Virus record (IMG/VR): IMGVR_UViG_3300011113_000640
Location: 248,001-312,000 of that record
Strand: one strand, 5' to 3'
DNA: 64,000 nucleotides
In this document: positions 2-44,613 of the stretch, piece by piece
Layout: each line of letters starts with the position of its first letter
How positions within the stretch are numbered: position 1 is the stretch's first letter
The notes under the pieces: model-generated
Told to the model about the DNA's origin: nothing
Databases searched by the model: none
The model's input: the letters and a program-made list of their open reading frames with translations, nothing else
Position numbers and translations under genes: made by a program

Positions 2-799
2 GAAGAGTTACAATGGCTCAAACGCGGTGAAGACAAAAAACAAAGCCATCACTATCAAATGTTGCGACAAGGTGCTTGGCCCAGAGAAAATCAGCAGTTT
101 TGGTCAGAGATAGATCAGATAGTGAATCAAATACGATACATAGAATTCACTGGTGGCGAACCTTTCATGATACAAGAACACTTTGACATGTTGCAAGGGT
201 TGATAGATCGTGGCATAGCCCATCAGGTAGAAATACACTACAACACCAATGGAACCCAATGGCCAGAACAAGCCGAAGCGATATGGCGTCATTTCAAAAC
301 TGTTGAGATTGCGTTCAGCATTGATGATGTGGGTGCTAGATTTGAATATCAACGGACCAATGCAGTTTGGGATGAAGTAGTGGCCAACATTGAAAAATTT
401 AAACAGTTGCGTCAACGTCACAGCAACATAAAACTACAAGCGTGCATCACAGTCAATGTTTTCAATGTATATTATTTGGAATCAGTGGCCTTATGGGTTG
501 CACAGCAAGGTTTTAATTTCGTTTATTGGAACATGTTGCATGATGCATATTATTTTAGCATAGCCACACTGCCAGAATCAGCCAAGATTGGAATAGCCAA
601 AAAATTACAACAGGCACAGGTACCAGAATCAATCCGACGAGAGTTTGAAAAAATAATTGAATTTATGAACAACGGTGCTGGTCTTGATGGCAAGTTATTG
701 AAAATTAGAACCACAGATTTTGACTACAAACGCGGTCAAAACTTGGCCGTGGTTGCACCTGAATATGCTGCCCTGATAGATTATGCCGGCCCCAATTAA
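2..799 (+). CDS. Radical SAM protein, C-terminal part (5'-truncated by window edge)
   Basis: Frame is open from base 2; EFTGGEP, YNTNGT and FSIDD motifs; paralogue of 783-2090 and 4662-5912. Confidence 0.85.
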   Translation, partial: EELQWLKRGEDKKQSHHYQMLRQGAWPRENQQFWSEIDQIVNQIRYIEFTGGEPFMIQEHFDMLQGLIDRGIAHQVEIHYNTNGTQWPEQAEAIWRHFKTVEIAFSIDDVGARFEYQRTNAVWDEVVANIEKFKQLRQRHSNIKLQACITVNVFNVYYLESVALWVAQQGFNFVYWNMLHDAYYFSIATLPESAKIGIAKKLQQAQVPESIRREFEKIIEFMNNGAGLDGKLLKIRTTDFDYKRGQNLAVVAPEYAALIDYAGPN

Positions 800-2090
800 T
801 CGTCCTGAAACCCTGTGCATGGCCCCATGGACACACACATATCTCAGTCCACAAACCGAAAGACGCATGTGCTGTGCCAGCCGAGAACCCGCACAAAACT
901 TCGAACAGTATATAGACACAGCTGCAGGTTCTGGAAAATATACACCTGTGAGCCTGGATGAGCACTGGAACAATCCTCACATACGAAGTGTGCGACTGAG
1001 GATGATGCAGGGAGAAATTTTGCCCGAGTGTGAAGTATGTAACAATAAGTTATTGAACACTGACGTATACAGAGACTACTTCAATCGATTATTTGGTCAC
1101 AAATATGAAGAGTGCATGCGTGCCACCGATCGCTATGGGTTCACCAAAGTAAGACCAGTCAGTTGGGATTATAGGTTCAGTAATCTATGTAACTTCAAAT
1201 GTCGCATGTGTGGAGACATGCTGAGCAGTGCCTGGGAAAGTGAACAACGACAGCACAATATGATTGACTGGTCAAATCCAAAAAATACATGGATGCGACC
1301 CGAGGTACGAGAAAAGATTTCAGCTTATCAAGATTCGCAGATTGAGGCCGAATTCGCTTTGGCGGTAGAGCAACATCGTGTGGAAGAAGTATACTGGGTG
1401 GGTGGTGAACCACTCATGTACGAACAACACTGGCGTTATATGCAACGTATTATTGAACTTGGAGATGGACCACGTGTGTATGCCAGATACAACACCAATC
1501 TCAGTAGGGTAGATTATCGCGGAACAAATCTTTATCGTGATATTCTGGCACACATACGTGATTGGCAAATCTGTGCAAGCCTGGATGGCACTGGTGCTAC
1601 GGGCGAATATATAAGGACAGGGTTGGATTATGTTGCATGGTTAGAGAATTTCAAACAAGGGCTAGAAATTACACATCATCGCAGACAGATGCGCATTGAT
1701 TTCACGTTGACATTGCCTGGCCTGTTTGAAGTTGTAAATATCCAGAGACTGGCCGATGAGTTAAATGTAGACATACTGGCCAAAGTAATATTTAGTTTTA
1801 CTCCAGACATTGTAATGAGTCCCTTGGCATTGCCCAGACCTGTTTTAGAGAGAGTGGTTGATGAACTTGCTGACCAAATACCCAACGGAGCACTCCGAGA
1901 TGTGCTAAATCAACTCAAACAACGACCGACCTTTGCCGAACAATGGCCAGATTCTTATCAGGCAGGACTTGCAAAAGGCAAGGCTCGTGTGCTAAAATTA
2001 GAACAGATCCGTGGAGACAGTTACACCATGGCCGACATTTTACAATCTAACAAAGACATATATGACTGGTACCAAGCGATTGCTACTTGA
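783..2090 (+). CDS. Radical SAM protein with N-terminal Cys-rich (twitch/SPASM-like) segment
   Basis: CNFKCRMC (CxxxCxxC), GGEP, YNTN; N-terminal CMAPW...MCC...CEVC. Confidence 0.9.
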   Translation: MPAPINRPETLCMAPWTHTYLSPQTERRMCCASREPAQNFEQYIDTAAGSGKYTPVSLDEHWNNPHIRSVRLRMMQGEILPECEVCNNKLLNTDVYRDYFNRLFGHKYEECMRATDRYGFTKVRPVSWDYRFSNLCNFKCRMCGDMLSSAWESEQRQHNMIDWSNPKNTWMRPEVREKISAYQDSQIEAEFALAVEQHRVEEVYWVGGEPLMYEQHWRYMQRIIELGDGPRVYARYNTNLSRVDYRGTNLYRDILAHIRDWQICASLDGTGATGEYIRTGLDYVAWLENFKQGLEITHHRRQMRIDFTLTLPGLFEVVNIQRLADELNVDILAKVIFSFTPDIVMSPLALPRPVLERVVDELADQIPNGALRDVLNQLKQRPTFAEQWPDSYQAGLAKGKARVLKLEQIRGDSYTMADILQSNKDIYDWYQAIAT

Positions 2091-3117
2091 TGTTGTTGAG
2101 CTAGACCTAGGCACGCCCGAAGATCTGTTGCGTGTGTATGTCAACATCTACGACAATAGTCTCAGCCGCAAATGGCTGATTGCCTTGAACAATTTGCTCG
2201 AGAACAATTATCATCTGGAAAAAAATTACTGTTTTTTTGGATTTGCAGACGGTCCTAGGAATGGGTCATATATCCTGGATCAAATAAATCGTAGTATACA
2301 GTCCATCAATGATAGCGATCTAGGATACCGTATCAATGATCATTTTGACATGAATAACAGTGTTGATGATCGAGGTGCAGTTGCCCGTGAACATTTCAAT
2401 CAGCTGCACAGATACTTTGAAGACCTACAAGGTGGCAGCGGCCACATCAGTGATTACTACTGGCGGGCAGATAATGCCACACGGTGGCATATCAGACAAT
2501 TGAATCTTTTGTGTCACGAATTTGAATCATGGCAACTGAGTTGGCGGAAGAAACACACAGCACCCGAATGGCAACGCCCGAGCCAACTCATGTGTTGGCT
2601 ATCAGCCCCAAGATTTGTATTGGACGAGGAAGACTATGAACTGTTTGGAATTGATACTATCAATCGCAGTCTGGGCGGAGTATATGTAGGAGTTAATAAA
2701 GCAGTTGGCAAACACCATTGGGAAGTATTCCAAGACGAAGGCCGCGACAGCCGGCTAAATGAACTCACAACCACTAGCCTCAAGGCACAGACCGAAGCCG
2801 CTGGCGACTTTGACATAGAGTGGGCCAACAATCCCGGCACATTTCCTTGGCAGATCAAACAGCTAAAGGAGTTTCGTGAATGGTTAACAGTCAACGGAAT
2901 TGATCCCGAAGATAAAAGTCTGACCATTGGTCATCCACAAGTAGGTCAGGTGGATCTGGTCCGCAGTTTTGATTCAGAAGATTACAAGCATATATGGAAC
3001 CAATTAAATACACACCTTAATGTTCATGCCATACGCACCAGCACGGTCAGTGCTGTGTACGAATATTGCTGGAGTGACCCTGATTACATGGAGAAACAAA
3101 TCAAATGTCTTGGATAA
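2080..3117 (+). CDS. Hypothetical protein
   Basis: Long ORF in operon; TTG at 2080 chosen to minimise overlap (track start 2011). Confidence 0.75.
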   Translation: MLLDVVELDLGTPEDLLRVYVNIYDNSLSRKWLIALNNLLENNYHLEKNYCFFGFADGPRNGSYILDQINRSIQSINDSDLGYRINDHFDMNNSVDDRGAVAREHFNQLHRYFEDLQGGSGHISDYYWRADNATRWHIRQLNLLCHEFESWQLSWRKKHTAPEWQRPSQLMCWLSAPRFVLDEEDYELFGIDTINRSLGGVYVGVNKAVGKHHWEVFQDEGRDSRLNELTTTSLKAQTEAAGDFDIEWANNPGTFPWQIKQLKEFREWLTVNGIDPEDKSLTIGHPQVGQVDLVRSFDSEDYKHIWNQLNTHLNVHAIRTSTVSAVYEYCWSDPDYMEKQIKCLG

Positions 3118-3206
3118 AAAACTTAATCAATCGCGTCAAATTAGAAATAAGATACAGAAAAAAGTTAAAAGAACTTCGCAAAAGAGATCCTTTTATCTAT
3201 AAATGA
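3105..3206 (+). CDS. 33-aa basic peptide MSWIKNLINRVKLEIRYRKKLKELRKRDPFIYK (not in ORF track)
   Basis: Hand-translated; GGAG about 12 nt upstream; ATGA overlap with carbamoyltransferase start. Confidence 0.75.
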   Translation: MSWIKNLINRVKLEIRYRKKLKELRKRDPFIYK

Positions 3207-4669
3207 AACATCAGTATATACTGGGACTCAGTGCCGGATTCCATGATGCGGCCGCCGCCGTGATCCGCAACGACGGTGAGATCGTTTTTGCTGGACACAG
3301 CGAACGCTATTCAAAAAAGAAAAATGATGCAGATACCTGTCCAGGTCTGCTGGAAGAATTTTGTAACTATCCTATAGACACCATTGCTTATTATGAACGC
3401 CCTTGGCTTAAACAGTTACGTAATCTTGTGAGTGGGCAAGGCATAGATTGGTCAAACATCACAGTACAACAAGTTCTTAAAAATCAACTGGGTTCATGGT
3501 TGCAACACCCACCCAGGCAAACTAAAACTTACAGTCATCACCTGTGCCATGCGGCTGCAGGTTTCCAAACAAGTCCATATGATCGCGCCACCTGTGTGGT
3601 CATAGATGCCATCGGCGAGTTTGACACCATTAGTATCTGGGGAGCAGAATATGACAAGCAAGATCGTGCGCAGTATAAAAAGTTATGGAGCCAAACTTAT
3701 CCTAGGAGCATCGGGCTCTTTTATAGTGCAATTACTCAGCGCATTGGCCTACACCCGTTAGACGAAGAATACATAACCATGGGCATGGCCGCATATGGCC
3801 AACCTCTGTATGTGGAAGAATGCAGAGCCTTGTTGGAAGACAATCTACACATAGGCATAGATCCTGCCTGGCTGTGGCTGGCCAGCAATGAAGATATTGC
3901 GGCCAGTGCCCAGGTGCTAACAGAAGAATTGATATATAGTATTATGCGCCGTGCCCAAGAATTTGGATGGAGTTCTAATCTAGTCTACCAGGGCGGCGTG
4001 GCTTTGAACTGTCTTGCTAATAGAAAACTCGGTGAATATTTTGAAAACATTTGGATTATGCCTTGTCCTGGTGACGCTGGCAATAGCCTTGGTGCTGCCG
4101 CATTGGCCCATGGAAGACGTTTACGCTGGACAGATGCGTACCTTGGCCACGAGATCCCAGGAGAATATCCTGTTCGCGCCCTCGTTGATCATTTACAAAG
4201 TGATAGAATCGTCGGTGTCGCTAGTGGTCGAGCAGAATTTGGGCCCCGAGCCTTGGGAAACAGAAGTTTGCTCGCAGACCCAAGAGGATCAGATATAAAG
4301 GATCAAGTCAATGAAATCAAACGCCGCCAAAAGTTTAGACCGTTTGCGCCGGTTATCCTGGCAGAGCAAGCTCATGAATTTTTTGATATGCCCCGGGGTT
4401 GGGATCACAGTCCTTATATGCAGTCAATCGCAACTTGCCGCAGTCCTGACTTATACCCTGCTATCTGTCATGTGGATAACACTAGCCGAGTACAGACTGT
4501 GTCAGCTGATGGTTCAGGCATTAGAGCACTGTTAGAAGCCTGGTATGAGCTCACAGGTTGTCCCATGTTGCTGAACACCAGTCTTAACATACGTGGTGAA
4601 CCCATGGTCAATGATCGTGCGGATGCCGACAGATTTGAACAGAAGTATAATGTAAAAGTGTTTAGTTAA
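3203..4669 (+). CDS. O-carbamoyltransferase (NodU/CmcH/TobZ family)
   Basis: GFHDAAAA, ERYS, HHLCHAA, GGVALNC, EFGPRALGNRS, FRPFAP, LLNTSLN motifs. Confidence 0.95.
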   Translation: MKHQYILGLSAGFHDAAAAVIRNDGEIVFAGHSERYSKKKNDADTCPGLLEEFCNYPIDTIAYYERPWLKQLRNLVSGQGIDWSNITVQQVLKNQLGSWLQHPPRQTKTYSHHLCHAAAGFQTSPYDRATCVVIDAIGEFDTISIWGAEYDKQDRAQYKKLWSQTYPRSIGLFYSAITQRIGLHPLDEEYITMGMAAYGQPLYVEECRALLEDNLHIGIDPAWLWLASNEDIAASAQVLTEELIYSIMRRAQEFGWSSNLVYQGGVALNCLANRKLGEYFENIWIMPCPGDAGNSLGAAALAHGRRLRWTDAYLGHEIPGEYPVRALVDHLQSDRIVGVASGRAEFGPRALGNRSLLADPRGSDIKDQVNEIKRRQKFRPFAPVILAEQAHEFFDMPRGWDHSPYMQSIATCRSPDLYPAICHVDNTSRVQTVSADGSGIRALLEAWYELTGCPMLLNTSLNIRGEPMVNDRADADRFEQKYNVKVFS

Positions 4670-19953: not shown

Positions 19954-21091
19954 CCTGTGTGTAAGTGCCAATTTTATACAAGTGACTTAGATGCCCACGT
20001 AACCCTTCATACACGGTTCCGCTGTTGAACCATTGTTTGCCACAGATTCTTTCTAGTTCGTGTAAACTATTTACCCATTTGGTTTTGGCTTCAAATTCGC
20101 CTTCGATGAACCAGCGGCTTAACTCGTTCCATACAGCTCGCGTGGGCTTTTTGATTTGCCAGGTATCATGTTTCCAGTCTGGATAAATGCTGAAATTCAC
20201 TTCGCGATAATAGTCTTCGTCGTGAAAATTGGCAATGTTGTTGGTGTGCTTGATAAGATGTATCCGATTGGTTGACTTCAGCCAGTTTACCACCACGTGA
20301 CTTTGTTTGACCGCCAACTCGGGCAGATTTGGCGACCAATAAAAGTATTCATCGTTTTCCCAATACTCGCCAAGAATATCATTGGTAGGCAAGGTTCCGG
20401 TGGTCATGATCACATCTAAAAAAGCAAAATAAATGTTTGTATCATCTCTCAACAGTCGGGGTTTGTCTACCCCATAAACAAACCCAACCTTTTTGCCCCG
20501 GTGTAATAATTCATTGTGCTCGCGAAATATCTTGTGAAATCGCGATCGTACCATACAGGTAGGATCAAATCTAACTCCAGCGGTCCAGAACCAATCAGGA
20601 TTGTTGGCTGCTTCTAGTATGTTCTTGGTCCAGTCATATACATTGACCTTGATGTTGTGATCGGCCACCAACCTGCGAAGTTGCGGCAAGGCCTGCTGGA
20701 TTTCTCGGGTGTAGTAGCCTGGTGTAGTATCAGATCCCAAACGTGCATATTCTTGTTCTTCAGCTTCGAATGCTCCAAACATATAAACTTCGTCCAGCTT
20801 GATGTTGTTTTTGATAAAAGTTCGAAGGATATACCAGGAATCAACTCCTCCGGAATAAAACAGCACCAAATGATCATAGGCTTCTCGCAGTTGCAAGGCA
20901 CGTTGACGATACAGCTCTTCCAGAGCTACCGGAGGATCTAGGTCCCAGCGGGCAGTACCAAAGATACTGTCATGATAATCCCATTCTATATGTTGCCCAG
21001 AAGAGTTGGCTTCCAGTATGGCTTCTAGTTTGTTGAAAAAGGGCCGACCATTGCAGGTATAAACCCCTTTGTTGTGATACAAATATGTCAT
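19943..21091 (-). CDS. PP-loop (N-type ATP pyrophosphatase superfamily) protein of unknown function
   Basis: LFYSGGVDS PP-loop; YGVDKP. Confidence 0.7.
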   Translation of the reverse strand: MTYLYHNKGVYTCNGRPFFNKLEAILEANSSGQHIEWDYHDSIFGTARWDLDPPVALEELYRQRALQLREAYDHLVLFYSGGVDSWYILRTFIKNNIKLDEVYMFGAFEAEEQEYARLGSDTTPGYYTREIQQALPQLRRLVADHNIKVNVYDWTKNILEAANNPDWFWTAGVRFDPTCMVRSRFHKIFREHNELLHRGKKVGFVYGVDKPRLLRDDTNIYFAFLDVIMTTGTLPTNDILGEYWENDEYFYWSPNLPELAVKQSHVVVNWLKSTNRIHLIKHTNNIANFHDEDYYREVNFSIYPDWKHDTWQIKKPTRAVWNELSRWFIEGEFEAKTKWVNSLHELERICGKQWFNSGTVYEGLRGHLSHLYKIGTYTQVDQ

Positions 21092-22002
21092 TGGGCGATG
21101 TTGTTTCTATGTCTGTAAAGTAATTGTTCTAACAATCTCACATGTTTGTTATAATACATGGTCACAGGAACATTGTCAAATTGACTGGGTCGCATGTCAC
21201 TGAGACTTTGTATGGTAGCAAGGCCAATTTGACTGGTGGCCTGTGTCAGGATTCGTGCAATCTCATCCTGACGCTGAGATCGCATGGTACGATTGGCAAT
21301 CACAATATTGAACACTGTGGGTGCAGTTATGCCTTGTTCCGCCAGAGTTTTCACTGCCGGCAAGTCTGGATGACGCTTGGGGCAACTCATGGCCAACATT
21401 TGTAGCCGTGGATTTCTGGCTTTCATTTGTTGATAGTTGGCCACTCGTTCCAATACCATGTTCACAGAACCATCACCGGTCATCAGCAACAAGGCATCCA
21501 TGTTGCTTTTGAAAGGCACATACCGCACTGTGAAACCATAGCGTGATGCTAATTGTAAAGCGGTCAAGTGTGCGGCATTGCCTATGCCCACACCGCCCAC
21601 GACCAATTCACGCCGACCTTGTAGGCTGGCCACACCCTGACGTTCATCGCCGACATTGGTTATAACCCCCCAGCAGGCATCGCCCATGCTCCATACAGGA
21701 TCATAGTCCGTGAGATTCAAGCGTCCGGCCACGGTTTGTTCTACAAATTTGGGTGCCACGATGGCTACACGGTTCTGTGGTTGTTCGTCCATGTACCGCA
21801 CGGCCAAGATTTGTTCGCCGCCGGGCCGGAATTCCAATATAAAATTGTATTGTGATTGGTTGCGATTGGCCTGTTCTATAATTCGAAACATAGCCGGCGA
21901 TCCTGAGTGGCTGGCACTGTAAGGACTTACTATGGTTATAGTTTCTGCACTCAATACAAAATTTGACCAAAAGGTCAACATTATTAATGCTAATTTTATC
22001 AT
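21088..22002 (-). CDS. Bug/TctC-family periplasmic substrate-binding protein
   Basis: Signal peptide; ITIVSPY, RPGG, GVGIGNAAHL, YVPFK, RHPDLPAVKTLAEQG. Confidence 0.85.
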   Translation of the reverse strand: MIKLALIMLTFWSNFVLSAETITIVSPYSASHSGSPAMFRIIEQANRNQSQYNFILEFRPGGEQILAVRYMDEQPQNRVAIVAPKFVEQTVAGRLNLTDYDPVWSMGDACWGVITNVGDERQGVASLQGRRELVVGGVGIGNAAHLTALQLASRYGFTVRYVPFKSNMDALLLMTGDGSVNMVLERVANYQQMKARNPRLQMLAMSCPKRHPDLPAVKTLAEQGITAPTVFNIVIANRTMRSQRQDEIARILTQATSQIGLATIQSLSDMRPSQFDNVPVTMYYNKHVRLLEQLLYRHRNNIAQ

Positions 22003-22158: not shown

Positions 22159-22323
22159 TCAACGGCCTCGGCCGGCACTTCTTGTTGGAGGTTTTTTGCC
22201 TATCACAGGTGCCCGTTGTTTGACGGTTTTCCTTTCCACCTGTGGAGCATCATCATTTTCAGGATGATGGATTCCTTTTTTCTTGTCTGCGGCCTTCTTT
22301 AAGAAATCGCTCATTTTGCTCAT
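22159..22323 (-). CDS. Small basic protein (MSKMSDFLKKAADKKKG...)
   Basis: AAGGA SD; track's longer start lies within a tRNA. Confidence 0.7.
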   Translation of the reverse strand: MSKMSDFLKKAADKKKGIHHPENDDAPQVERKTVKQRAPVIGKKPPTRSAGRGR

Positions 22324-22340
22324 AGTTGTTTCCTTGTTAA

Positions 22341-22424
22341 TGGTGCCCCCGGGGTGAATCGAACACCCTTTGAGTTTCCTCGACGGATTACAAATCCGTT
22401 GCAATCCCACTATGCGACAGGGGC
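22341..22424 (-). tRNA. tRNA-Thr(UGU) with long class II-type variable arm
   Basis: Acceptor GCCCCTG/CGGGGGC-ACCA; anticodon arm ACGGA-TTTGTAA-TCCGT; variable region CGAGGAAACTCAAA; T arm GGGTG-TTCGATT-CACCC. Confidence 0.88.
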
Positions 22425-22437
22425 TTGGTTGTGATCA

Positions 22438-22908
22438 TTAAATGATTTTTCCTGTCGCAGCATCAACTGTCACAGGTGTGTGTTGCGCAAATGTAAATGT
22501 GTATGCAGGATTTTTCTGACTGGCCGTCTGTTTCAATGTGCAGTCAGACCAAACTTCTGTTATGCCGCTTTTGGTCAAAATCTCCACGGCCTGACTGCAA
22601 TTTATCGCAGGCGGATAAGTCCAGGGCTGACAATCCTTTACACGACTGTCATCTGGAAAGGGACCTGTGGCATGACCCGTGTTGCTGATCACAATGGCTG
22701 TAGGCCGATTGTCACGGGCACCCAGCCAGCAAGTGTAACAGTCACCACCATTGACACTGTTGGCCAACAGGAATTTACTTCCGTGTTGTACCAAATCAAT
22801 AACACTTTTGGCGCCCCAGACCTGCTGATCAAAACTCAACGTCGACATCAGTCCAACTTGTCTGACATAACTCAAAATGCGATTCAGTATGTTGTTAAAG
22901 ATTTTCAT
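22438..22908 (-). CDS. Hypothetical protein with PepSY-like C-terminus
   Basis: Ends VTVDAATGKII; start may be 22848. Confidence 0.6.
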   Translation of the reverse strand: MKIFNNILNRILSYVRQVGLMSTLSFDQQVWGAKSVIDLVQHGSKFLLANSVNGGDCYTCWLGARDNRPTAIVISNTGHATGPFPDDSRVKDCQPWTYPPAINCSQAVEILTKSGITEVWSDCTLKQTASQKNPAYTFTFAQHTPVTVDAATGKII

Positions 22909-23126
22909 GATTGCTCCGGGGATATTTGATCAGCCATGTCAATTGCAGGCTCTTTGTAGCCAGCTCTGCGTTTCAACAAGTCGATCCTGCGTTGAATTTT
23001 GGCCTGTTTCTTATTGGCCTGTGTTTTTTCTTTTAATTCGGTGAGTTGCTTTACACTGAGACTGACGATCCGGACCTCACCGTTTTTGGTGTAGCCAGGT
23101 TTTTTGCGATTGAGAGTTTTTGCCAT
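22905..23126 (-). CDS. Small basic hypothetical protein
   Basis: AGGA SD; ATGA overlap downstream. Confidence 0.75.
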   Translation of the reverse strand: MAKTLNRKKPGYTKNGEVRIVSLSVKQLTELKEKTQANKKQAKIQRRIDLLKRRAGYKEPAIDMADQISPEQS

Positions 23127-23181
23127 GATTGTGATCCTGTTTGATAATTTTACTTAGTGTTATCACGGCAAGTTTTTAAAA

Positions 23182-26855: not shown

Positions 26856-26932
26856 TGGTGCCCCGGGAAGGATTCGAACCTTCAACAGCTCCCTTCTGAG
26901 GAGAGTGCGTCTACCTGTTGCGCCACCGGGGT
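26856..26932 (-). tRNA. tRNA-Leu(CAG) with short variable loop and A1:C72 mismatch
   Basis: ACCCCGG/CCGGGGC-ACCA; CTCTC-CTCAGAA-GGGAG; variable loop CTGTT. Confidence 0.88.
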
Positions 26933-26938
26933 TGACCT

Positions 26939-27529
26939 TTACGTTACTTGCGTGGTACCGTTGCCGTTTTTAAAACCAATCTCGCCACCTTCTGCTTCAA
27001 TCCTTTTGATCACATCTTCAAACAGGATAGGAGCAAAGTCGGTTTGTTCCACGCACACGCAATGATAACGAACATCAACTATGTCGGTGATCTTGCCATT
27101 GAATCCTGGCAACATCACCCGGTTGGCATGCAAGTGCCCGTGGATGTTGACACCAAAGCGACCAAGGCTTTCTGAGTGAATAGGAATATGGCTGAGTATC
27201 ATGCCATTCATCACATGGTATCCACGCAGGCTACGGAAGTAAGGAGTGTAATCCTCATCCTTAAAGATATCGTGATTACCACGGATAAGAATCTTGTCAC
27301 CATTGAGTCTATTCATAATAGGTAAACTCTTGCGGTTGATCACTACATCACCCAAGTGATATACTTTATCGTTTGGACGCACACGCTCGTTCCAGGCCCG
27401 GACCATGAACTCGTCCATTTCGTTGGGATCTGTCCAAGGGCGAAGTTTTGTAACTCCATCGTTACGTGTGAAGCGACATACACCTGCGTGACCAAAGTGC
27501 GTATCGCTGACTAAAAATACTGCTGGCAT
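26939..27529 (-). CDS. Calcineurin-like metallophosphoesterase
   Basis: SDTHFGH, HLGD, GNHD, HGHLH. Confidence 0.92.
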   Translation of the reverse strand: MPAVFLVSDTHFGHAGVCRFTRNDGVTKLRPWTDPNEMDEFMVRAWNERVRPNDKVYHLGDVVINRKSLPIMNRLNGDKILIRGNHDIFKDEDYTPYFRSLRGYHVMNGMILSHIPIHSESLGRFGVNIHGHLHANRVMLPGFNGKITDIVDVRYHCVCVEQTDFAPILFEDVIKRIEAEGGEIGFKNGNGTTQVT

Positions 27530-27554
27530 AAGTGCCTCCTTTCTTTGTAAAACA

Positions 27555-27628
27555 TGGCGCCGGTCTAAGGAATCGAACCTCAATTAACGGTTTTGGAGAC
27601 CGCTGTAATGCCATTATACCAGACCGAC
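27555..27628 (-). tRNA. tRNA-Trp(CCA)
   Basis: GTCGGTC/GACCGGC-GCCA; GCGGT-CTCCAAA-ACCGT. Confidence 0.93.
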
Positions 27629-27958: not shown

Positions 27959-28032
27959 TGGTTGCGGGTGACGGAGTTGAACCGCCAACTGGAGCTTATG
28001 AGACTCCCGAGATACCATTTCTCTAACCCGCG
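27959..28032 (-). tRNA. tRNA-Met(CAU), initiator-like
   Basis: CGCGGGT/ACCCGCA-ACCA with C1:A72 mismatch; loop CTCATAA. Confidence 0.9.
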
Positions 28033-28490: not shown

Positions 28491-29231
28491 TTAATTAAAA
28501 GTTTTTGTCAAGCCAACTACCACGGCATTCTTGTAGAGCTTTTGACCGCTCACAGTGTTTGCAGTTTCAAAAGTTCTTGTTGTGCCAGAGTTGGTGAAAT
28601 ACTTTACACTGACGTCAAAGTCTTTGGGTAGACTGTAAACAAAACCAGCATTGATGTCATTGTAATCGTAGGCTGTGCTGTTGGCCACATTGGTACGACC
28701 ATAGTGTGCTACAACAGCCAGATTCTTGATCACAGGAACTGGTAACTTGCCATCTGCTTGCACGTAGGTTGTGCCTTGAGCATTGGCTGTACCGAAATAG
28801 CCATCTCCCAAGGTTCTGCTATACTTGGCAGAAATGATGTCTTTGTAACCTAGGCCGACATAGCCTTCATAGGTGTCAAAGTTTGAACCAGTTTTTGCTG
28901 AAGTGGTGGCACGTGGATAGAAATAGTTGTAGCTACCGATGTCGATCGAGATGCCCTTGAAGATTTCTTTCTTGTAACCAGCGTAGAGATCACTCTCTAC
29001 ACCTGCACCATTGGTGTAGACTTGGCTAGAAACACTGCTGTTCCAGTTACCAATGTACAAGCCACTCTTGTGTGCATAGTCGATGCCGCCCTGAACTGCA
29101 GGAGCATTTTGGGTTTGGCTAACACCGCGGAAACGGTAGTCGCTGGTCAAACCTAAATTGCCGGTGAGTTGAGCTTGAGCCGAGGCAACAAAGCCAGCGG
29201 ACAAGGCCAATGCTAATAATAATTTTTTCAT
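28491..29231 (-). CDS. TorF-family putative porin (TIGR02001-like)
   Basis: Signal peptide; SDYRFRGVSQT, PAVQGGIDY, GNWNSSV, DLYAGY; ends KTFN. Confidence 0.9.
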   Translation of the reverse strand: MKKLLLALALSAGFVASAQAQLTGNLGLTSDYRFRGVSQTQNAPAVQGGIDYAHKSGLYIGNWNSSVSSQVYTNGAGVESDLYAGYKKEIFKGISIDIGSYNYFYPRATTSAKTGSNFDTYEGYVGLGYKDIISAKYSRTLGDGYFGTANAQGTTYVQADGKLPVPVIKNLAVVAHYGRTNVANSTAYDYNDINAGFVYSLPKDFDVSVKYFTNSGTTRTFETANTVSGQKLYKNAVVVGLTKTFN

Positions 29232-29910: not shown

Positions 29911-29977
29911 AATTGTCCTTAAAGGTAATTTAATGATATCGTATCTAGATTTAGTTATGACTCAAGATTAACGGATC

Positions 29978-30003
29978 AAAAAAAACCCGCCGAAGCGGGT
30001 TTT
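29978..30003 (-). terminator. Intrinsic terminator after tmRNA
   Basis: AAAACCCGC-TTCG-GCGGGTTTTTTTT. Confidence 0.92.
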
Positions 30004-30009
30004 GACATT

Positions 30010-30280
30010 TTTGGTAACAAGGCATGTCTGCCCCGGAGATCATGCCGCTAAGGCAAAGACCTCGTCGTTAGCTGCGTTTGCAGTTATCATTTTGCTTCTA
30101 CGACCAGGCTTTCCCAGTCCTAACGGGTTTCGCATTCCCGTGTTGCCGTCCGCATTGGCTCACCATGTCGATCCTGATTCATCCCCACCCAAGCATACTG
30201 GACAATACACTTGGGTGGAGATGCTGGGATTTGCACCCAGGTCCATAGTGCCTTCACTTGGAAGGGATTACAACAATTCG
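30010..30280 (-). ncRNA. ssrA: Circularly permuted two-piece tmRNA; tag ANAANDEVFALAA* at 30040-30081
   Basis: T arm and 3' acceptor CATCTCCACC precede 5' acceptor GGGGATG (G3:U70); intervening hairpin 30187-30216; ATAACT-GCA resume context; outer ends approximate. Confidence 0.92.
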
Positions 30281-30287
30281 AAAAACG

Positions 30288-30545
30288 TTAACTCAACTTA
30301 CGTGCCATTTGAGGCGCTGGCGTAAACGAATTCACTATAGCCAAATAACCGTCGGCTGACGCTTCAGTGCTGAATAATCTTATAAAATTGTCTGAGTAAG
30401 TGATTCCGTCTGAATTTGTAGTCGTCTGAGTATTAACTGACATGGTAACCGCTGCCACGGCTGGATCAGTGAGATATGCACTTAATTGATTCGTTTCTGC
30501 TTCAGTGCGAGCACGTCCGTAAATAACTTCTGTAAAATATAGCAT
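30288..30545 (-). CDS. Hypothetical protein
   Basis: AAGGA SD; TATAAATA at 30570-30577. Confidence 0.7.
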   Translation of the reverse strand: MLYFTEVIYGRARTEAETNQLSAYLTDPAVAAVTMSVNTQTTTNSDGITYSDNFIRLFSTEASADGYLAIVNSFTPAPQMARKLS

Positions 30546-31000: not shown

Positions 31001-31075
31001 TGGTAGGCCTTGAAAGAATTGAACTTTCACTCCATCGATTATGAGTCGATTGCTTTACCATTAAGCTAAAGGCCC
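31001..31075 (-). tRNA. tRNA with CAU anticodon, Ile2 (lysidine)-type body
   Basis: GGGCCTT/AAGGCCT-ACCA; ATCGA-CTCATAA-TCGAT resembles bacterial tRNA-Ile2. Confidence 0.85.
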
Positions 31076-36193: not shown

Positions 36194-37429
36194 TTATAGT
36201 CTGGTATTACCGTAATGTACTACAGTTATTCCCGGTGCGTCAACCATTTTGCGCCATGGATCGACCACAACTGATCCTGGCAAAATTGGGCAGTATGGTA
36301 GTGTGTCTGGAGTATTGCCAGTGTATTCGTATGTGATCTTGCGATTGTGTGCCCATAAGAACACCGCAGGATAATCCAAAGCGTCTACCACTTCGTCTCG
36401 GTTGTCTGCAAGCGGATCGACATAGACCACAGGCAAGCCTGCTTCCTTGATATAAAATCCAACCAGGGTTGAGTATGAGCCAATGCAATATTCTACATCT
36501 GGCTTGTAGGCTTTACCGTGTATCACAACAGGCAAATTGTATTTCTTGGCTTGTTCGACCAAAAATAATGCCAAGTTTTTTGCTTGAACTTCTCTGGCAT
36601 GCATCACAGTATCAAACAGGTCGTATCCAATGTTGTATTCTTCGGCCAACCAACGCAGAGCAATGTTGTCGCGGGGATGGCATGCACCTGCATCGCCCAT
36701 GCCGGCGGTCATGTACTTGGGTCCCATGATACGCATGGTGCTACGGGCCAAGGCATTGGTCACAACATCCACATTGATATTGCCAATCTTCAAGGCAAAG
36801 TCCTGGATCATGTTTACCAAGCCAACCTTGGCACTAATAAATGTGTTGTAGAAAATCTTGATAGCTTCGCATTCGTCCCATGTGCCAATTTCATAGCGTG
36901 GATTGTTCTGCATGATGGTTTCATACAAGTCGTGAAGTTCACCGGCAACACCGGTCAAACTACCATCTTCGGTGCCCAACATGATCATTTCTGGGTTGAC
37001 CATGTCCCACTTTACACTGCCCATGGCAATCAAGTAAGGGTTATAAACAAACTCGTGTCGGGCATCTAATAAAGGAACAAACTTCTTGCGAGTAGTTCCT
37101 GGCAATACTGTGCTAATTAGCACCACTTTCTTGGGCGTGGTAGCGTACTGATTTACATTTTTAATAGCATCAACAACAGCATCGTGACCAAAGTCTCGAG
37201 GAGTCATATGGCTTGACGGAACACTGCCATCGTAGCCTTCGGCATGTGGAGTGGGCACTGCAATAAAGATCCACTCGCTTTTGTCGACTAATTCTTCAAT
37301 GCTACATACTTTTACACTATCGCTGGTGCGTGGGTAAATGTCGTAACCGCGTACTTCATGCTTTTCAGCAAATACTTCGGCACAGTCTAGCCCAAGTTTA
37401 CCTATACCAATAAATCCTATTTTAGCCAT
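36194..37429 (-). CDS. ugd: UDP-glucose/GDP-mannose 6-dehydrogenase
   Basis: GIGKLG, IAVPTP, STVLPGTT, EAIKIFYNTF, GACHPRD, KAYKP. Confidence 0.9.
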   Translation of the reverse strand: MAKIGFIGIGKLGLDCAEVFAEKHEVRGYDIYPRTSDSVKVCSIEELVDKSEWIFIAVPTPHAEGYDGSVPSSHMTPRDFGHDAVVDAIKNVNQYATTPKKVVLISTVLPGTTRKKFVPLLDARHEFVYNPYLIAMGSVKWDMVNPEMIMLGTEDGSLTGVAGELHDLYETIMQNNPRYEIGTWDECEAIKIFYNTFISAKVGLVNMIQDFALKIGNINVDVVTNALARSTMRIMGPKYMTAGMGDAGACHPRDNIALRWLAEEYNIGYDLFDTVMHAREVQAKNLALFLVEQAKKYNLPVVIHGKAYKPDVEYCIGSYSTLVGFYIKEAGLPVVYVDPLADNRDEVVDALDYPAVFLWAHNRKITYEYTGNTPDTLPYCPILPGSVVVDPWRKMVDAPGITVVHYGNTRL

Positions 37430-42692: not shown

Positions 42693-43297
42693 AGTTGCTC
42701 TAGATCCTCGGGTTTGAGCACATAGTAGTGCGTGAGTATGCCCTTGGCAAACGACCAATCCGGTGGCGCAGTTTCACGTATGTTGATTCTTGGCAAAAAT
42801 GCCCGCAACCTACGGATGATATATTCTTTGTCGATAAAGTCATAGGCAATCATGCCATTGACATTGACGTATACTTCTAAATTGTCTAACTTGGCTTCGT
42901 AGATAAAACGTAATGCTTCCCATATACTTCCTTCACCACACTCACCGTCACTGATCAAACAATGCACTCGACGAGTACGATCAGCCAGAGCATATCCACA
43001 AGCCACAGTAAGGCCCATGCCTAAACTACCAGAGCTACAAGGCAGTCCGTCTTCGATGTTTCTGTGTGGATGGACTCCGTGTTTGTGAAATAAGTGTTCA
43101 GCATCTTTGCCAAGATATTTTTCTAAAATCACGTACCAAGCCAGGGCCGCGTGACCAGAACTTAAGATAAACGGTTCGTTGGGTTGTCGATTTTTGTAAA
43201 TTTCTTCAATGATATTGACAGCATTAAGATTGGAACTTAGATGTCCAATCTTTTCTCGATAGCTGATATCAATGATTCTTTGTTCAACGTCGTTCAT
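42689..43297 (-). CDS. Split transketolase, ThDP-binding subunit
   Basis: GH, SSGH, GSLGMGL, SDGECGEGSIWEA. Confidence 0.92.
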   Translation of the reverse strand: MNDVEQRIIDISYREKIGHLSSNLNAVNIIEEIYKNRQPNEPFILSSGHAALAWYVILEKYLGKDAEHLFHKHGVHPHRNIEDGLPCSSGSLGMGLTVACGYALADRTRRVHCLISDGECGEGSIWEALRFIYEAKLDNLEVYVNVNGMIAYDFIDKEYIIRRLRAFLPRINIRETAPPDWSFAKGILTHYYVLKPEDLEQL

Positions 43298-44613
43298 AGA
43301 TATAAACTCATAAATCCATCAACCTTTTCTCCAATGTACTCAATCTGTTCAGGAGTAATAACTGGACTGCATCCATGGAAGTAGGTATTCTTCATTGTGA
43401 ATGTGGCCACAGGATAATTGTCACGTGCTGCCACAGGATCCATCAAATGACTATACGCAGGTTGCAACATGATGTTGCCAGCAAAGTATGGGCGTGTCTG
43501 TATCAAGTTTTCTTCAAGATAATCAACAATGTCCATGCGTGAGAACGGAGCATCCGCACGTATGGTCAATGGGAAAGCAAACCAACTGACATCGGCTTTG
43601 TCTCTGGCACGTGGCAAGTGGAAAAACTGTTCATACTTTTCATAGATGGCAAACAATAGATTGTAGTTGCGTTGACGTAAAGCATGTATCTCTGGCAATT
43701 TTTTAAGTTGCTCAAGTCCCATGGCTGCTTGTAGTTCAATGGGTTTTAAGTTATAACCAATTTCATCATACACATACTTGTGATCAAAAATCTGATCTGG
43801 CATTTCTGGTATCCACTCATTGAATCGCTTGCCACAGGTGCCACATTTTAATTTGTTGGCCTCGGGTCCTACGCAATAGCAACCGCGTCCCCACTCACGC
43901 AGGCTACGCACAATGATTTCTTGTTGTGGATCATTCATGGCCACAAAGCCACCTTCGCCCATGGTCATGTGATGTGCCGGATAAAAACTGCATGACGCCA
44001 TTTCACCAAAGCTACCTAACGGCTTGCCGTCATAGGTTGTGCCTAGTCCATCACAGCAGTCTTCAAGCAGAACAAGATTGTACTTGTTAACTAGTTCCAT
44101 AACCCGGTCCATATTAGGTGGATTGCCTAAAACATGAGCAAAGGTAATAATCTTAATATCTGTATCTGCCGCAAGCAAACGCTCTGCATGGTCCAAATCA
44201 ATGTTTAGTGTATCAATTTCAATATCACAGAACACTGGCGTAAATCCATTTTGCAAGGTTGGATTCAGTGTGGTTGGAAATCCTGCGATTGGCATCAGTA
44301 CTTTGGTGCCGGGTGGAAAATTATGTCCACGCTTGCTTTTCATGGCGGTCATCATCAAGAGATTTGCGCTACTACCACTGTTGGTAAGCACGCCGCGTGT
44401 CTTGCCAAACTCCCTAGGAAATTTTTGTTCAAAGCGCAGGCTTTTGTTGCCCATGACCAGCCACCCATTAAGCAAGGCTTCTGCGGCCGCCACATACTCG
44501 TCGGATGAAAAATGCGGGCCAGCATAATTAACAAAGTCTTTGCCGGCCACCCAGGTTTTGTCTGCCTGTTTGGCGTCAATGTACTGTTTAATCAAGTTTA
44601 AAATTTCATTCAT
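43294..44613 (-). CDS. rfbH: NDP-4-keto-6-deoxyglucose 3-dehydratase (RfbH/DdhC, E1)
   Basis: SGSSAN, EDCCD, SFYPAHHMTMGEGG (His in place of Lys), WGRGCYC..CG.RF, DHKY. Confidence 0.93.
   Translation of the reverse strand: MNEILNLIKQYIDAKQADKTWVAGKDFVNYAGPHFSSDEYVAAAEALLNGWLVMGNKSLRFEQKFPREFGKTRGVLTNSGSSANLLMMTAMKSKRGHNFPPGTKVLMPIAGFPTTLNPTLQNGFTPVFCDIEIDTLNIDLDHAERLLAADTDIKIITFAHVLGNPPNMDRVMELVNKYNLVLLEDCCDGLGTTYDGKPLGSFGEMASCSFYPAHHMTMGEGGFVAMNDPQQEIIVRSLREWGRGCYCVGPEANKLKCGTCGKRFNEWIPEMPDQIFDHKYVYDEIGYNLKPIELQAAMGLEQLKKLPEIHALRQRNYNLLFAIYEKYEQFFHLPRARDKADVSWFAFPLTIRADAPFSRMDIVDYLEENLIQTRPYFAGNIMLQPAYSHLMDPVAARDNYPVATFTMKNTYFHGCSPVITPEQIEYIGEKVDGFMSLYL

What the first reader, a model, noticed from the sequence alone, without database searches (positions are those of the whole stretch)
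22341..22424. tRNA-Thr(UGU) with a class II long variable arm
Seen: UGU anticodon in a 7-nt loop and Thr-like G1-C72/C2-G71, but a 14-nt variable region with a GAG-GAAA-CTC hairpin and a 3-bp D stem. Established: bacterial long variable arms are normally restricted to Leu, Ser, Tyr and Sec, and SerRS recognises the arm. Inference: either a Thr tRNA reshaped to evade host tRNA nucleases, or a tRNA charged with another amino acid that mistranslates ACA/ACG.
Basis: partly seen in the sequence, partly recalled or inferred. Interest (0 to 1): 0.62.

Follow-up and report, generated by a model that had tools for sequence, protein, structure and literature searches.

The report
Phage threonine tRNA with extra arm
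A giant freshwater phage carries a threonine tRNA with an extra small hairpin arm that threonine tRNAs normally lack; this design recurs in dozens of uncultured phages but was not found in cells, and it most likely still inserts threonine.

Summary
Window 22341-22424 (minus strand) encodes an 84-nt tRNA. It has anticodon UGU, G1-C72/C2-G71, A73, encoded CCA and a 3-bp D stem. Its 14-nt variable region is C-GAG-GAAA-CUC-AAA.

It is not an error or a one-off. Contigs from three other studies carry it unchanged, and 44 other IMG/VR phage contigs carry relatives (21 distinct sequences). The hairpin is always kept through compensatory changes, has 2-4 bp, and always ends in a GNRA loop. The same pattern gave only a chance match in 185,579 cellular genomes. 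BLAST found no relative in GenBank phages.

Evidence favours a working Thr tRNA:
- The ThrRS acceptor determinants never vary.
- It is the only Thr tRNA in this 320-kb phage and in several near-complete phage tRNA sets.
- The phage encodes no class IIa synthetase.
- ACA makes up 31% of Thr codons and swaps with other Thr codons as freely as they swap with each other.
- ACA encodes conserved Thr residues in a sugar dehydratase.

Mistranslation is therefore unlikely. What the arm does is unknown. Host tRNA-Thr(UGU) is a published target of the P2-OLD and PARIS nucleases, so nuclease evasion is plausible but untested. A tolerated structural relic is about as likely. This is a new variant of a known kind.

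The parts
22341..22424 (-). Whole tRNA-Thr(UGU) gene, 84 nt, CCA encoded
   Evidence: ARAGORN; Rfam RF00005 at 53 bits; own covariance model R1 at 112.7 bits.
22418..22424 (-). Acceptor stem, 5' strand GCCCCUG (G1, C2 ...)
   Evidence: G1-C72 and C2-G71 are invariant in 21 of 21 family members, while pairs 4-7 vary with compensation.
22341..22351 (-). Acceptor stem 3' strand CGGGGGC (22345-22351), discriminator A73 (22344) and CCA (22341-22343)
   Evidence: A73 is invariant in the family.
22401..22415 (-). D arm: 3-bp stem GCA/UGC, U13.U22 mismatch, loop AGUGGGA
   Evidence: The three pairs are 100% paired in the family.
22383..22399 (-). Anticodon arm ACGGA-UUUGUAA-UCCGU; anticodon UGU at 22390-22392 (+ strand reads ACA)
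   Evidence: All 5 stem pairs show changes on both sides within the family.
22369..22382 (-). Variable arm C-GAG-GAAA-CUC-AAA: 3-bp stem capped by a GNRA tetraloop, with a 3-nt purine tail
   Evidence: The two inner pairs are paired in 21 of 21 members, with 3 and 4 pair types. A natural variant in run X3 changes only these bases, to CUCGAAAGAAAA.
22352..22368 (-). T arm GGGUG-UUCGAUU-CACCC
22445..22473 (-). Weak sigma-70-like promoter match (GTGACA, 17-nt spacer, AAAAAT) about 20 nt upstream of the tRNA 5' end
   Evidence: 9 of 12 matches. This is a consensus match only, not evidence of function.

Best explanation
This is a working phage elongator tRNA-Thr(UGU). The host threonyl-tRNA synthetase charges it through G1-C72, C2-G71 and G35-U36, and it decodes ACA (and ACG) as threonine for a phage that uses ACA heavily. 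It belongs to a virus-specific tRNA family whose variable loop has been replaced by a compact hairpin: 2-4 bp closed by a GNRA tetraloop, followed by an A-R-A tail. Selection keeps the hairpin folded, but its sequence and length are free to change.

Inferred and not shown: the arm is kept because it makes the phage's copy structurally unlike the host's tRNA-Thr(UGU). That host tRNA is a recurrent target of defence nucleases such as P2-OLD and PARIS AriB. The arm would let the phage copy escape recognition while its threonine identity stays intact.

The confidence of 0.4 is for the whole statement, including the arm's role. That it is a functional, faithfully decoding Thr tRNA I rate at about 0.8. 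The first rival shares that part.
For: It is a real, selected tRNA:
- All universal tRNA positions are present.
- 44 further IMG/VR contigs carry relatives, giving 21 distinct sequences.
- 97.7% of stem cells are paired, 18 of 23 pairs change on both sides, and 0 of 500 shuffles reach this.
- RNAalifold predicts the arm's helix on its own.
- Against L009 the tRNA has 2 differences in 84 nt, while the adjoining 178 nt have about 40.

Threonine identity:
- G1-C72, C2-G71 and A73 are invariant although they were not part of the search pattern. The identity rules are in PMC9976931.
- It is the only Thr tRNA of the 320-kb phage and of arrays with 14-20 tRNAs: L067, L079 and L091.
- The phage has no PF00587 or PF03129 synthetase domain.

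Codon evidence:
- ACA is 31% of Thr codons, with Thr at 72.9 per 1000 codons.
- Window ACA codons align to other Thr codons in relatives 33% of the time and to non-Thr codons 30% (n=122). ACC gives 32% and 28%, ACG 42% and 27%.
- In the DegT-like dehydratase, ACA encodes T115, T135 and T373. T115 and T135 are Thr in all four PDB homologues aligned, and T373 is Thr in the two closest.

Nuclease link:
- P2-OLD and AriB both target host tRNA-Thr(UGU), and phage Thr(UGU) tRNAs rescue.
- AriB also needs contacts far from the anticodon loop.
- Long-arm versions in the fetched arrays cluster in Thr, Asn, Lys and Ile. Asn+Lys+Ile give 12 of 70 distinct sequences against 3 of 350 for other class I isotypes.
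- In L071, L075 and L081 the armed copy sits beside a class I Thr(UGU) that instead has an altered anticodon stem (sequences).
Against: - No aminoacylation, expression or cleavage data exist. No RNA run holds the sequence.
- The window tRNA keeps a 5-bp anticodon stem with the paired CGG/CCG (CNG) motif that OLD cuts. By my reading of the sequences, 17 of the 21 family members keep such a motif, and many keep the full AriB site UAAUCA. Any protection would therefore have to come from the arm alone.
- Whether ThrRS tolerates an arm in the variable region of its tRNA could not be examined here.
- The isotype enrichment comes from loci chosen for carrying Thr(UGU), and its sequences are related to each other.
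- More distant relatives of this phage (L002, L006) use ordinary class I Thr(UGU) tRNAs, so the arm is not indispensable.
Confidence: 0.4

Rival explanations
1. The tRNA has the same function (Thr, charged by ThrRS), but the arm has no adaptive role. It is a tolerated relic of how the gene arose: modular exchange or remoulding among phage tRNA genes, for example from a class II tRNA-Tyr-like scaffold. It persists because the 3-bp D stem and class II-type core need an arm to fold.
For: - A phage tRNA-Tyr(GUA) (L097, L101, L102) shares the D arm, the arm's layout (3 bp, tetraloop, AAA or AGA tail) and the T arm with the armed Thr. By my count, 18 of 20 positions not fixed by the search pattern are identical to the L024 type.
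- The Tyr loop CUGUAAA and the Thr loop CUUGUAA differ by a one-base shift.
- The identical GAGGAAACUC hairpin sits in a tRNA-Pro(UGG) of L103, and the same layout occurs in a tRNA-Lys(CUU).
- The phages' own tRNA-Leu arms are also 3 bp plus GAAA.
- The arm shrinks to 2 bp in many members, and only its pairing is conserved, not its sequence.
- Relatives L002 and L006 manage with class I Thr tRNAs.
Against: - No family member has lost the hairpin, across 21 distinct sequences and many phage types.
- A natural variant swaps the whole arm (4 substitutions and 2 deletions, all pair-preserving) while the rest of the tRNA stays identical. This looks like maintained rather than decaying structure.
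- A tree of 59 core columns is unresolved and mixes armed Thr with class I Thr rather than with Tyr.
- The D arm of the window subgroup resembles a class I Thr D arm from L071.
Confidence: 0.33
2. The arm is a handle for a partner other than a nuclease, such as a phage or host tRNA-modifying or processing enzyme or another factor that must tell phage tRNA from host tRNA.
For: - The GNRA tetraloop is strictly conserved (GAAA or GUAA in 21 of 21; GCAA in L103). GNRA loops are common docking sites (own knowledge).
- A calcineurin-like phosphoesterase is conserved among the tRNA genes in the relatives.
Against: - No tRNA-modifying or repair enzyme was recognised near the tRNAs.
- Tetraloops of the related Tyr and Lys tRNAs are UNCG, not GNRA. 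This fits simple stabilisation of a very short stem.
- The family occurs in many unrelated gene neighbourhoods.
Confidence: 0.1
3. The tRNA is charged with another amino acid and mistranslates ACA/ACG. Candidates are Tyr, through A73, G1-C72, the Tyr-like arm and G35-U36-A37 read one step out of register as GUA; Leu, through A73; or Ser, through the arm.
For: - A73 and a class II-like arm are shared with bacterial tRNA-Tyr and tRNA-Leu.
- The scaffold resembles a phage tRNA-Tyr.
- There are precedents. Nematode nev-tRNAs carry Gly or Ile anticodons and are charged with Leu (PMC3333845). HisRS charges tRNAs that have GUG at positions 35-37 (PMC5389517).
Against: - C2-G71 (Thr-type) is invariant, whereas the related Tyr tRNA has G2-C71.
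- There is no U35 (Tyr), no G73 (Ser), and neither A15-U48 nor A20a (Leu).
- ACA is common and exchanges with ACC, ACT and ACG like any synonymous Thr codon. Tyr is absent from the eight most frequent residues it aligns with; Leu accounts for 6 and Ser for 5 of 122.
- ACA encodes conserved Thr residues of an enzyme.
- At roughly 23 ACA codons per 1000, systematic miscoding would be very costly.
- Low-level ambiguity cannot be excluded.
Confidence: 0.06
4. The sequence is not used in translation: a pseudogene, a decoy for nucleases, or another tRNA-like element.
For: No expression data are available. Mukai et al. found irregular tRNAs that are charged but not used.
Against: - It has a complete canonical core, an encoded CCA, and strong purifying and compensatory selection.
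- It is the sole Thr tRNA in large phage tRNA sets.
- Its anticodon matches a codon the phage uses heavily.
Confidence: 0.04

Closest known systems
Canonical bacterial and phage tRNA-Thr(UGU), including the phage Thr(UGU) tRNAs (e.g. T5's) that rescue cells from P2-OLD and PARIS
   Same: Anticodon UGU with U33 and A37; G1-C72 and C2-G71; A73; 7/5 acceptor/T architecture; carried by phages in tRNA clusters. The anticodon arm is close to that of proteobacterial tRNA-Thr(UGU) (own knowledge).
   Different: The variable region is 12-16 nt and forms a hairpin, instead of 4-5 nt. The D stem has 3 bp. The published resistant phage tRNAs escape through an altered CNG motif and a shorter anticodon stem (PMC12445682), or through U39A, A41C and U16C (PMC12409363). 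This one keeps CGG/CCG and a 5-bp stem; only C41 differs from the AriB site.
Bacterial class II tRNAs, especially tRNA-Tyr(GUA)
   Same: The variable arm is 13-14 nt with a 3-bp stem, a small loop and a 3-nt tail. It also shares the 3-bp D stem, A73 and G1-C72. A phage tRNA-Tyr (L097, L101, L102) shares D-arm and T-arm sequence with the family.
   Different: The anticodon is UGU rather than GUA, so U35, the main TyrRS determinant, is absent. Position 2-71 is C-G rather than G-C. The codon evidence says Thr.
Nematode nev-tRNAs (V-arm tRNAs with Gly or Ile anticodons; PMC3333845, PMC4300185)
   Same: A class II-type arm on a tRNA whose anticodon belongs to a class I isotype, conserved within one lineage.
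   Different: nev-tRNAs are eukaryotic, derive from tRNA-Leu and are charged with Leu in vitro. Here the acceptor carries Thr determinants and the codon data indicate faithful Thr decoding.
allo-tRNAs and other irregular tRNAs of bacteria and phages (PMC5389517)
   Same: Non-standard tRNAs found by metagenome mining, some in phage tRNA clusters, with a long V-arm and anticodons of many isotypes.
   Different: allo-tRNAs have 8/4 or 9/3 acceptor/T stems, usually G73 or U73, and Ser identity. This tRNA is 7/5 with A73 and a much shorter arm.

Membership tests
Bacterial-type elongator tRNA (Rfam RF00005) | Cloverleaf with 7-bp acceptor stem, 5-bp T stem, 7-nt anticodon loop, and U8, A14, G18G19, U33, GTTCRA T loop and C61 | tested here: met
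   53 bits against a gathering score of 29; cloverleaf; the stems co-vary in 21 relatives.
tRNA-Thr (substrate of bacterial ThrRS) | Acceptor determinants G1-C72 and C2-G71 | tested here: met
   Present in the window tRNA and invariant in 21 of 21 members, although they were outside the search pattern. The rule is in PMC9976931.
tRNA-Thr (substrate of bacterial ThrRS) | Anticodon determinants G35 and U36 | tested here: met
   Anticodon UGU at 22390-22392. Across the family this was imposed by the search pattern, so it is not independent. A pattern that left the anticodon free found no other Thr anticodon on this scaffold.
tRNA-Thr (substrate of bacterial ThrRS) | Class I body: 4-5-nt variable loop | tested here: not met
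   The variable region is 14 nt with a hairpin, and 12-16 nt across the family.
tRNA-Thr (substrate of bacterial ThrRS) | The codon it reads means Thr in the genome that carries it | tested here: met
   ACA exchanges with other Thr codons like a synonymous codon and encodes conserved Thr residues in a DegT-like enzyme. This is indirect, because the host tRNA may also read ACA.
tRNA-Thr (substrate of bacterial ThrRS) | Aminoacylation with threonine | not testable with these tools
   This needs an in vitro charging assay.
Class II tRNAs (Leu, Ser, Tyr, Sec) | Variable region longer than 10 nt that forms a stem-loop, with a 3-bp D stem | tested here: met
Class II tRNAs (Leu, Ser, Tyr, Sec) | Anticodon of Leu, Ser, Tyr or Sec | tested here: not met
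   The anticodon is UGU.
tRNA-Ser identity | G73 plus a long arm | tested here: not met
   It has A73 and only a 3-bp arm. The Ser tRNAs of the same phage arrays are 85-97 nt long.
tRNA-Leu identity (E. coli rules) | A73 plus A15-U48, G18G19 and A20a | tested here: not met
   A73 is present, but position 15 is G (A in one subgroup), position 48 is A, and there is no A20a. The phages' own tRNA-Leu have a different D loop, GAAUUGGUAGA.
tRNA-Tyr identity (bacterial) | A73, U35 (and G34), long arm | tested here: not met
   A73 and the arm are present, but position 35 is G. Tyr is absent from the eight most frequent residues aligned with ACA.
allo-tRNA | 8/4 or 9/3 acceptor/T-stem composition | tested here: not met
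   The composition is 7/5. The definition is in PMC5389517.
Nuclease-resistant phage tRNAs (as shown for P2-OLD and PARIS) | Altered CNG motif and a shorter anticodon stem (OLD); U39A, A41C or U16C (AriB) | tested here: inconclusive
   The window tRNA keeps C28-G29-G30 / C40-C41-G42 and 5 bp, so it lacks the OLD escape changes. It has C41 where the AriB site has A41, but keeps U39. Whether the arm itself confers resistance cannot be tested here.

The most novel reading that the evidence does not exclude
The extra arm is a general viral way of armouring tRNAs. A minimal, tetraloop-capped hairpin is grafted into the variable region of exactly those tRNAs that bacterial defence nucleases attack: Thr-UGU, Asn-GUU, Lys-UUU and other ANN readers. 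It blocks nuclease docking on the anticodon stem and core while synthetase identity, EF-Tu binding and decoding stay intact. The mirror-image armless tRNA-Leu in the same phages would belong to the same arms race over tRNA shape.
Probability: 0.22. Interest if true: 0.85.

Novelty: new variant of a known kind. Interest (0 to 1): 0.62.

Why it matters
Textbook tRNA biology and current reviews limit the long variable arm in bacteria-type systems to Leu, Ser, Tyr and Sec. Here a whole virus-specific family breaks that rule for threonine while apparently keeping threonine identity. Sister cases exist for Asn, Lys, Ile, Pro, Gly and Cys, and the same phages carry tRNA-Leu genes with no arm.

This gives three things:
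- A natural test of how much extra structure ThrRS and other class II synthetases tolerate in the variable region of the tRNA.
- A concrete hypothesis for phage counter-defence that can be tested directly. tRNA-Thr(UGU) is the preferred target of P2-OLD and a prime target of PARIS.
- A compact natural scaffold showing where a hairpin can be inserted into a class I tRNA, which is useful for tRNA engineering.

If the arm turns out to be neutral, the family is still a clear example of tRNA genes being remoulded and recombined inside phage tRNA arrays.

Tried and rejected
- GenBank phages: megablast of the 3-kb neighbourhood and blastn of the tRNA gave no match. The commonest family member hit only part of a Vibrio phage tRNA-Ser.
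- Cellular genomes: the scaffold pattern gave one hit in 185,579 species genomes, and it is not a tRNA. This covers only that pattern. A cellular armed Thr tRNA with a different D loop would have been missed.
- Relatives cannot be drawn for a virus record.
- The MAFFT alignment of the family misplaced the gaps, so a covariance-model alignment replaced it.
- Ranking by whole-sequence identity to find the ancestor is confounded, because the class I Thr loci were selected on the same anticodon arm.
- An ML tree of 59 core columns is unresolved and does not support, or exclude, a Tyr origin.
- No phage-encoded ThrRS-type synthetase was found.
- PHROG and Pfam scans of 20 neighbouring proteins found no recognisable tRNA repair or modification enzyme, only a calcineurin-like phosphoesterase.
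- No RNA run holds the sequence, so expression is untested.
- Structure prediction, complex prediction and the large protein searches were not used, because no protein question arose that would change the verdict. The metagenome-wide pattern scan was not spent, because the viral collection already gave enough relatives.

Full report
THE OBSERVATION

The window is bases 248001-312000 of a 320,541-bp IMG/VR virus record that CheckV rates 93% complete. ARAGORN finds a tRNA-Thr(tgt) at 22341-22424 on the minus strand. Rfam's tRNA model scores it at 53 bits against a gathering score of 29, and places an 11-nt insertion exactly at the variable loop. The RNA folds at -35.4 kcal/mol, z = -3.17, and none of 200 shuffles does as well.

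The cloverleaf is:
- Acceptor GCCCCUG/CGGGGGC, with G1-C72, C2-G71 and U6.G67.
- U8 and C9.
- D stem G10-C25, C11-G24, A12-U23, followed by a U13.U22 mismatch.
- Anticodon stem ACGGA/UCCGU and loop UUUGUAA.
- Variable region C-GAG-GAAA-CUC-AAA.
- T arm GGGUG-UUCGAUU-CACCC, A73 and an encoded CCA.

Only the strand was left unstated.

NOT AN ARTEFACT

The phage occurs in freshwater, lake and river metagenomes from 13 studies. Contigs from three studies other than the likely source carry the tRNA unchanged. X4 covers 22325-22426 and X2 covers 22248-22399. X5 covers 22249-22900 with five differences, none in the tRNA.

A fourth run, X3, holds a variant whose only differences are 22372 G>T, 22373 A>C, 22379 C>G, 22380 T>A and single-base deletions at 22374 and 22381. 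Read on the tRNA strand, this turns CGAGGAAACUCAAA into CUCGAAAGAAAA. That is a different but still perfectly paired hairpin on an otherwise identical tRNA.

A FAMILY, AND ITS ANATOMY

A pattern built from the anticodon arm and the T loop found 59 IMG/VR loci, 9 of them with the 14-nt variable region. A pattern that leaves the anticodon stem, the arm and the acceptor free found 44 loci. Together with the window this gives 45 loci and 21 distinct sequences of 80-86 nt.

I built a covariance model from the five ungapped members and aligned all 21 sequences to it. On that alignment:
- 97.7% of stem cells are paired, against 74% in shuffles.
- 18 of 23 pairs show changes on both sides.
- No shuffle and no slid register comes close.

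The two inner pairs of the arm are paired in all 21 sequences. Their pair types are UA, AU and GC for one, and CG, GC, AU and UG for the other. The outer pair is Watson-Crick in 6 sequences, U.U in 8 and absent in 7. RNAalifold predicts the same inner helix independently.

The loop is always GNRA (GAAA or GUAA) and the 3' tail is A-R-A. The conserved object is therefore a minimal hairpin of 2-4 bp held shut by a stable tetraloop. Its sequence is free but its fold is not.

A further, more divergent armed Thr(UGU) with a different body sits in L103. Its arm is C-GGA-GCAA-UCC.

WHERE IT OCCURS

The same scaffold pattern gave a single match in one genome for each of 185,579 bacterial and archaeal species, and that match is not a tRNA. 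BLAST against 50,697 GenBank phage records found no relative. Within the limits of those searches, the family belongs to uncultured viruses. Full-text searches, two reviews of non-canonical tRNAs and the allo-tRNA paper contain no description of it.

RELATIVES OF THIS PHAGE

L009, L087 and L070 share syntenic genes with the window, with the ATPase 95-97% identical in amino acids. They carry the armed tRNA at the same place, between homologues of window ORFs 22938-23156 and 22159-22377. L009 has the identical arm, while L087 and L070 have the 12-nt form.

Against L009 the tRNA shows 2 differences in 84 nt, whereas the adjoining 178 nt show about 40. More distant relatives, L002 and L006 (ATPase 88%), carry ordinary class I Thr(UGU) tRNAs in non-equivalent positions. 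The arm is therefore conserved among close kin but is not universal in the wider clade.

WHICH AMINO ACID

Threonine identity in bacteria rests on acceptor-stem pairs and the anticodon, while position 73 matters little (PMC9976931). The specific determinants, G1-C72, C2-G71, G35 and U36, are from my own knowledge of the E. coli work. G1-C72, C2-G71 and A73 never vary in the family although pairs 4-7 change freely, and the acceptor was not part of the search pattern.

The rival identities lack their key elements:
- Ser needs G73 and a longer arm.
- Leu (E. coli rules) needs A73 plus A15-U48 and A20a, whereas here positions 15:48 are G:A or A:A and there is no A20a.
- Tyr needs U35.

The phage encodes no class IIa synthetase core or anticodon-binding domain, so a host enzyme must charge the tRNA. 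It is the only Thr tRNA among the phage's seven tRNAs. It is also the only Thr tRNA in arrays of 14-20 tRNAs in L067, L079 and L091.

Codon evidence points the same way:
- In 237 long ORFs, Thr is used 72.9 times per 1000 codons, and ACA makes up 31% of Thr codons.
- Across 7,873 codon columns aligned between window ORFs and related loci, ACA aligns with a different Thr codon in 33% of cases and with a non-Thr codon in 30% (n = 122). The figures are 32% and 28% for ACC, 22% and 38% for ACT, and 42% and 27% for ACG.
- Tyr is absent from the eight most frequent residues aligned with ACA, and Leu and Ser account for 6 and 5 cases.
- In the DegT-like sugar dehydratase (window 43294-44613), ACA encodes T115 and T135, which are Thr in all four PDB homologues aligned. 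It also encodes T373, which is Thr in the two closest, and T192, which is Ser or Ala in them.

ACA therefore means threonine in this phage. Systematic mistranslation is very unlikely. Low-level ambiguity cannot be excluded.

WHAT THE ARM MIGHT DO

This part is inference. Two recent papers show that host tRNA-Thr(UGU) is the preferred substrate of the P2 OLD nuclease and a prime target of the PARIS effector AriB. They also show that phage Thr(UGU) tRNAs rescue cells (PMC12445682 and PMC12409363).

OLD cuts after the C of a paired CNG motif at positions 28-30 and 40-42. The resistant phage tRNAs have altered motifs and shorter stems. AriB cuts UAAUC|A41 and also needs contacts distant from the anticodon loop.

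The window tRNA keeps CGG/CCG and a 5-bp stem. It differs from the AriB site only at C41. Most family members keep CUG/CAG and the full UAAUCA sequence (my reading). If this family resists such enzymes, the difference must lie elsewhere, and the arm, which emerges at the top of the anticodon stem, is the obvious candidate.

Three further observations are suggestive but weak:
- Three contigs carry an armed Thr(UGU) with a host-like anticodon arm next to a class I Thr(UGU) whose stem is CUC/GAG with UAAUGA.
- Among the 816 tRNAs in the fetched loci, arm-sized variable regions on class I isotypes concentrate in Asn(GUU), Lys(UUU/CUU) and Ile(UAU). They account for 12 of 70 distinct sequences, against 3 of 350 for all other class I isotypes (Fisher 6e-8). 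Together with Thr, these are the ANN readers that known anticodon nucleases favour.
- Between the window and L063/L087, the acceptor, D arm and T arm are identical, and all differences lie in the anticodon stem and the arm.

The sample was selected for carrying Thr(UGU) and its sequences are related, so the statistic is only a lead.

THE NEUTRAL ALTERNATIVE AND THE ORIGIN

A pattern with a free anticodon found the same scaffold with GUA (tRNA-Tyr in L097, L098, L101, L102), CUU (Lys in L099, L100) and UGG (Pro in L103, with the identical GAGGAAACUC hairpin), but with no other Thr anticodon. The Tyr tRNA shares with the L024-type Thr tRNA the D arm (CGCCGARUGGGAUGGCA), the arm's layout and tail, and the T arm. 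By my count, 18 of 20 positions not fixed by the pattern are identical. The Tyr loop CUGUAAA and the Thr loop CUUGUAA differ by a one-base shift.

That suggests remoulding of a class II scaffold. However, the D arm of the window subgroup also resembles that of a class I Thr from L071. An ML tree on 59 core columns is unresolved and mixes armed Thr with class I Thr. The origin is therefore open. The data fit modular exchange among phage tRNA genes.

A relic that ThrRS tolerates, and that the class II-type core now needs in order to fold, would explain the conserved pairing and free sequence as well as an adaptive role does. I rate it almost as likely.

VERDICT

The feature is a real, conserved, virus-specific variant of tRNA-Thr(UGU). 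I found no description of it in the literature held here. It most likely decodes ACA faithfully as Thr. The purpose of the arm is unknown, and nuclease evasion and structural relic are the two serious candidates.

Noticed in passing
window 26856-26932 (-): The mirror image of the finding: a tRNA-Leu(CAG) of only 77 nt with a short variable loop (class I shape), an A1.C72 mismatch, A73 and a Leu-type D loop. Twelve distinct 75-78-nt tRNA-Leu occur in the fetched phage loci (L002, L005, L006, L009, L012, L016, L020, L046, L054, L058, L087, L099). This fits the published finding that E. coli LeuRS does not need the arm.
   Followed up: partly
window 29949-30305 (-): A phage-borne tmRNA: Rfam beta_tmRNA at 129 bits and tmRNA_permuted at 118 bits, with tag peptide ANAANDEVFALAA. 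Together with TctC/Bug-like and Gcw_chp proteins nearby (21088-22002, 28491-29231), it hints at a betaproteobacterial host.
   Followed up: no
L016, L035, L073, L091, L092 (Asn-GUU); L011, L100 (Lys-UUU); L099, L100 (Lys-CUU); L008, L041, L074, L091 (Ile-UAU, 91-95 nt); L078 (Cys); L103 (Pro-UGG, Gly-UCC): Other normally class I isotypes also carry arm-sized variable regions in these phage tRNA arrays. They concentrate in Asn, Lys and Ile: 12 of 70 distinct sequences against 3 of 350 for other class I isotypes. The L103 tRNA-Pro has the very same GAGGAAACUC hairpin as the window tRNA.
   Followed up: partly
L071 1353-1437 and 1443-1517 (also L075, L081): An armed Thr(UGU) and a class I Thr(UGU) sit side by side. 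The armed copy has a host-like anticodon arm (CUG/CAG, UAAUCA). The class I copy has CUC/GAG and UAAUGA.
   Followed up: partly
L097 5745-5830, L101 1017-1102, L102 130-215: A phage tRNA-Tyr(GUA) shares the D arm, arm layout (GAC-UNCG-GUC-ARA) and T arm with the armed Thr family. It may be the ancestral scaffold or a recombination partner.
   Followed up: partly
L036 1844-1927: An 84-nt tRNA-like gene with an 8-nt anticodon loop (ARAGORN reports 'Thr|Asp', agtc) and a long variable region.
   Followed up: no
window 27959-28032 (-) and 31001-31075 (-): Two tRNA(CAU) genes. The first has a C1.A72 mismatch, which is typical of an initiator. All seven tRNAs and the tmRNA of the 320-kb genome lie within 9 kb on one strand, interspersed with ORFs.
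   Followed up: no
window 22438-22908 (-): A 156-aa ORF with no family match lies directly upstream of the tRNA. It is absent at the same place in L009, L070 and L087, where the homologue of ORF 22938-23156 abuts the tRNA.
   Followed up: partly
window 783-4669, 36194-37429, 43294-44613: A set of sugar-modification genes in a phage: a radical SAM/SPASM protein, a carbamoyltransferase, a UDP-glucose dehydrogenase-like protein, and a DegT-family enzyme closest to CDP-6-deoxy-hexulose 3-dehydrases (PDB 3bcx, E 2e-100).
   Followed up: no
window 26939-27583 (-): A calcineurin-like phosphoesterase (PHROG 547, Pfam Metallophos) sits between tRNA genes. It is conserved next to the tRNAs in L009, L087, L070, L063 and L078 (76-92% identity).
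   Followed up: no
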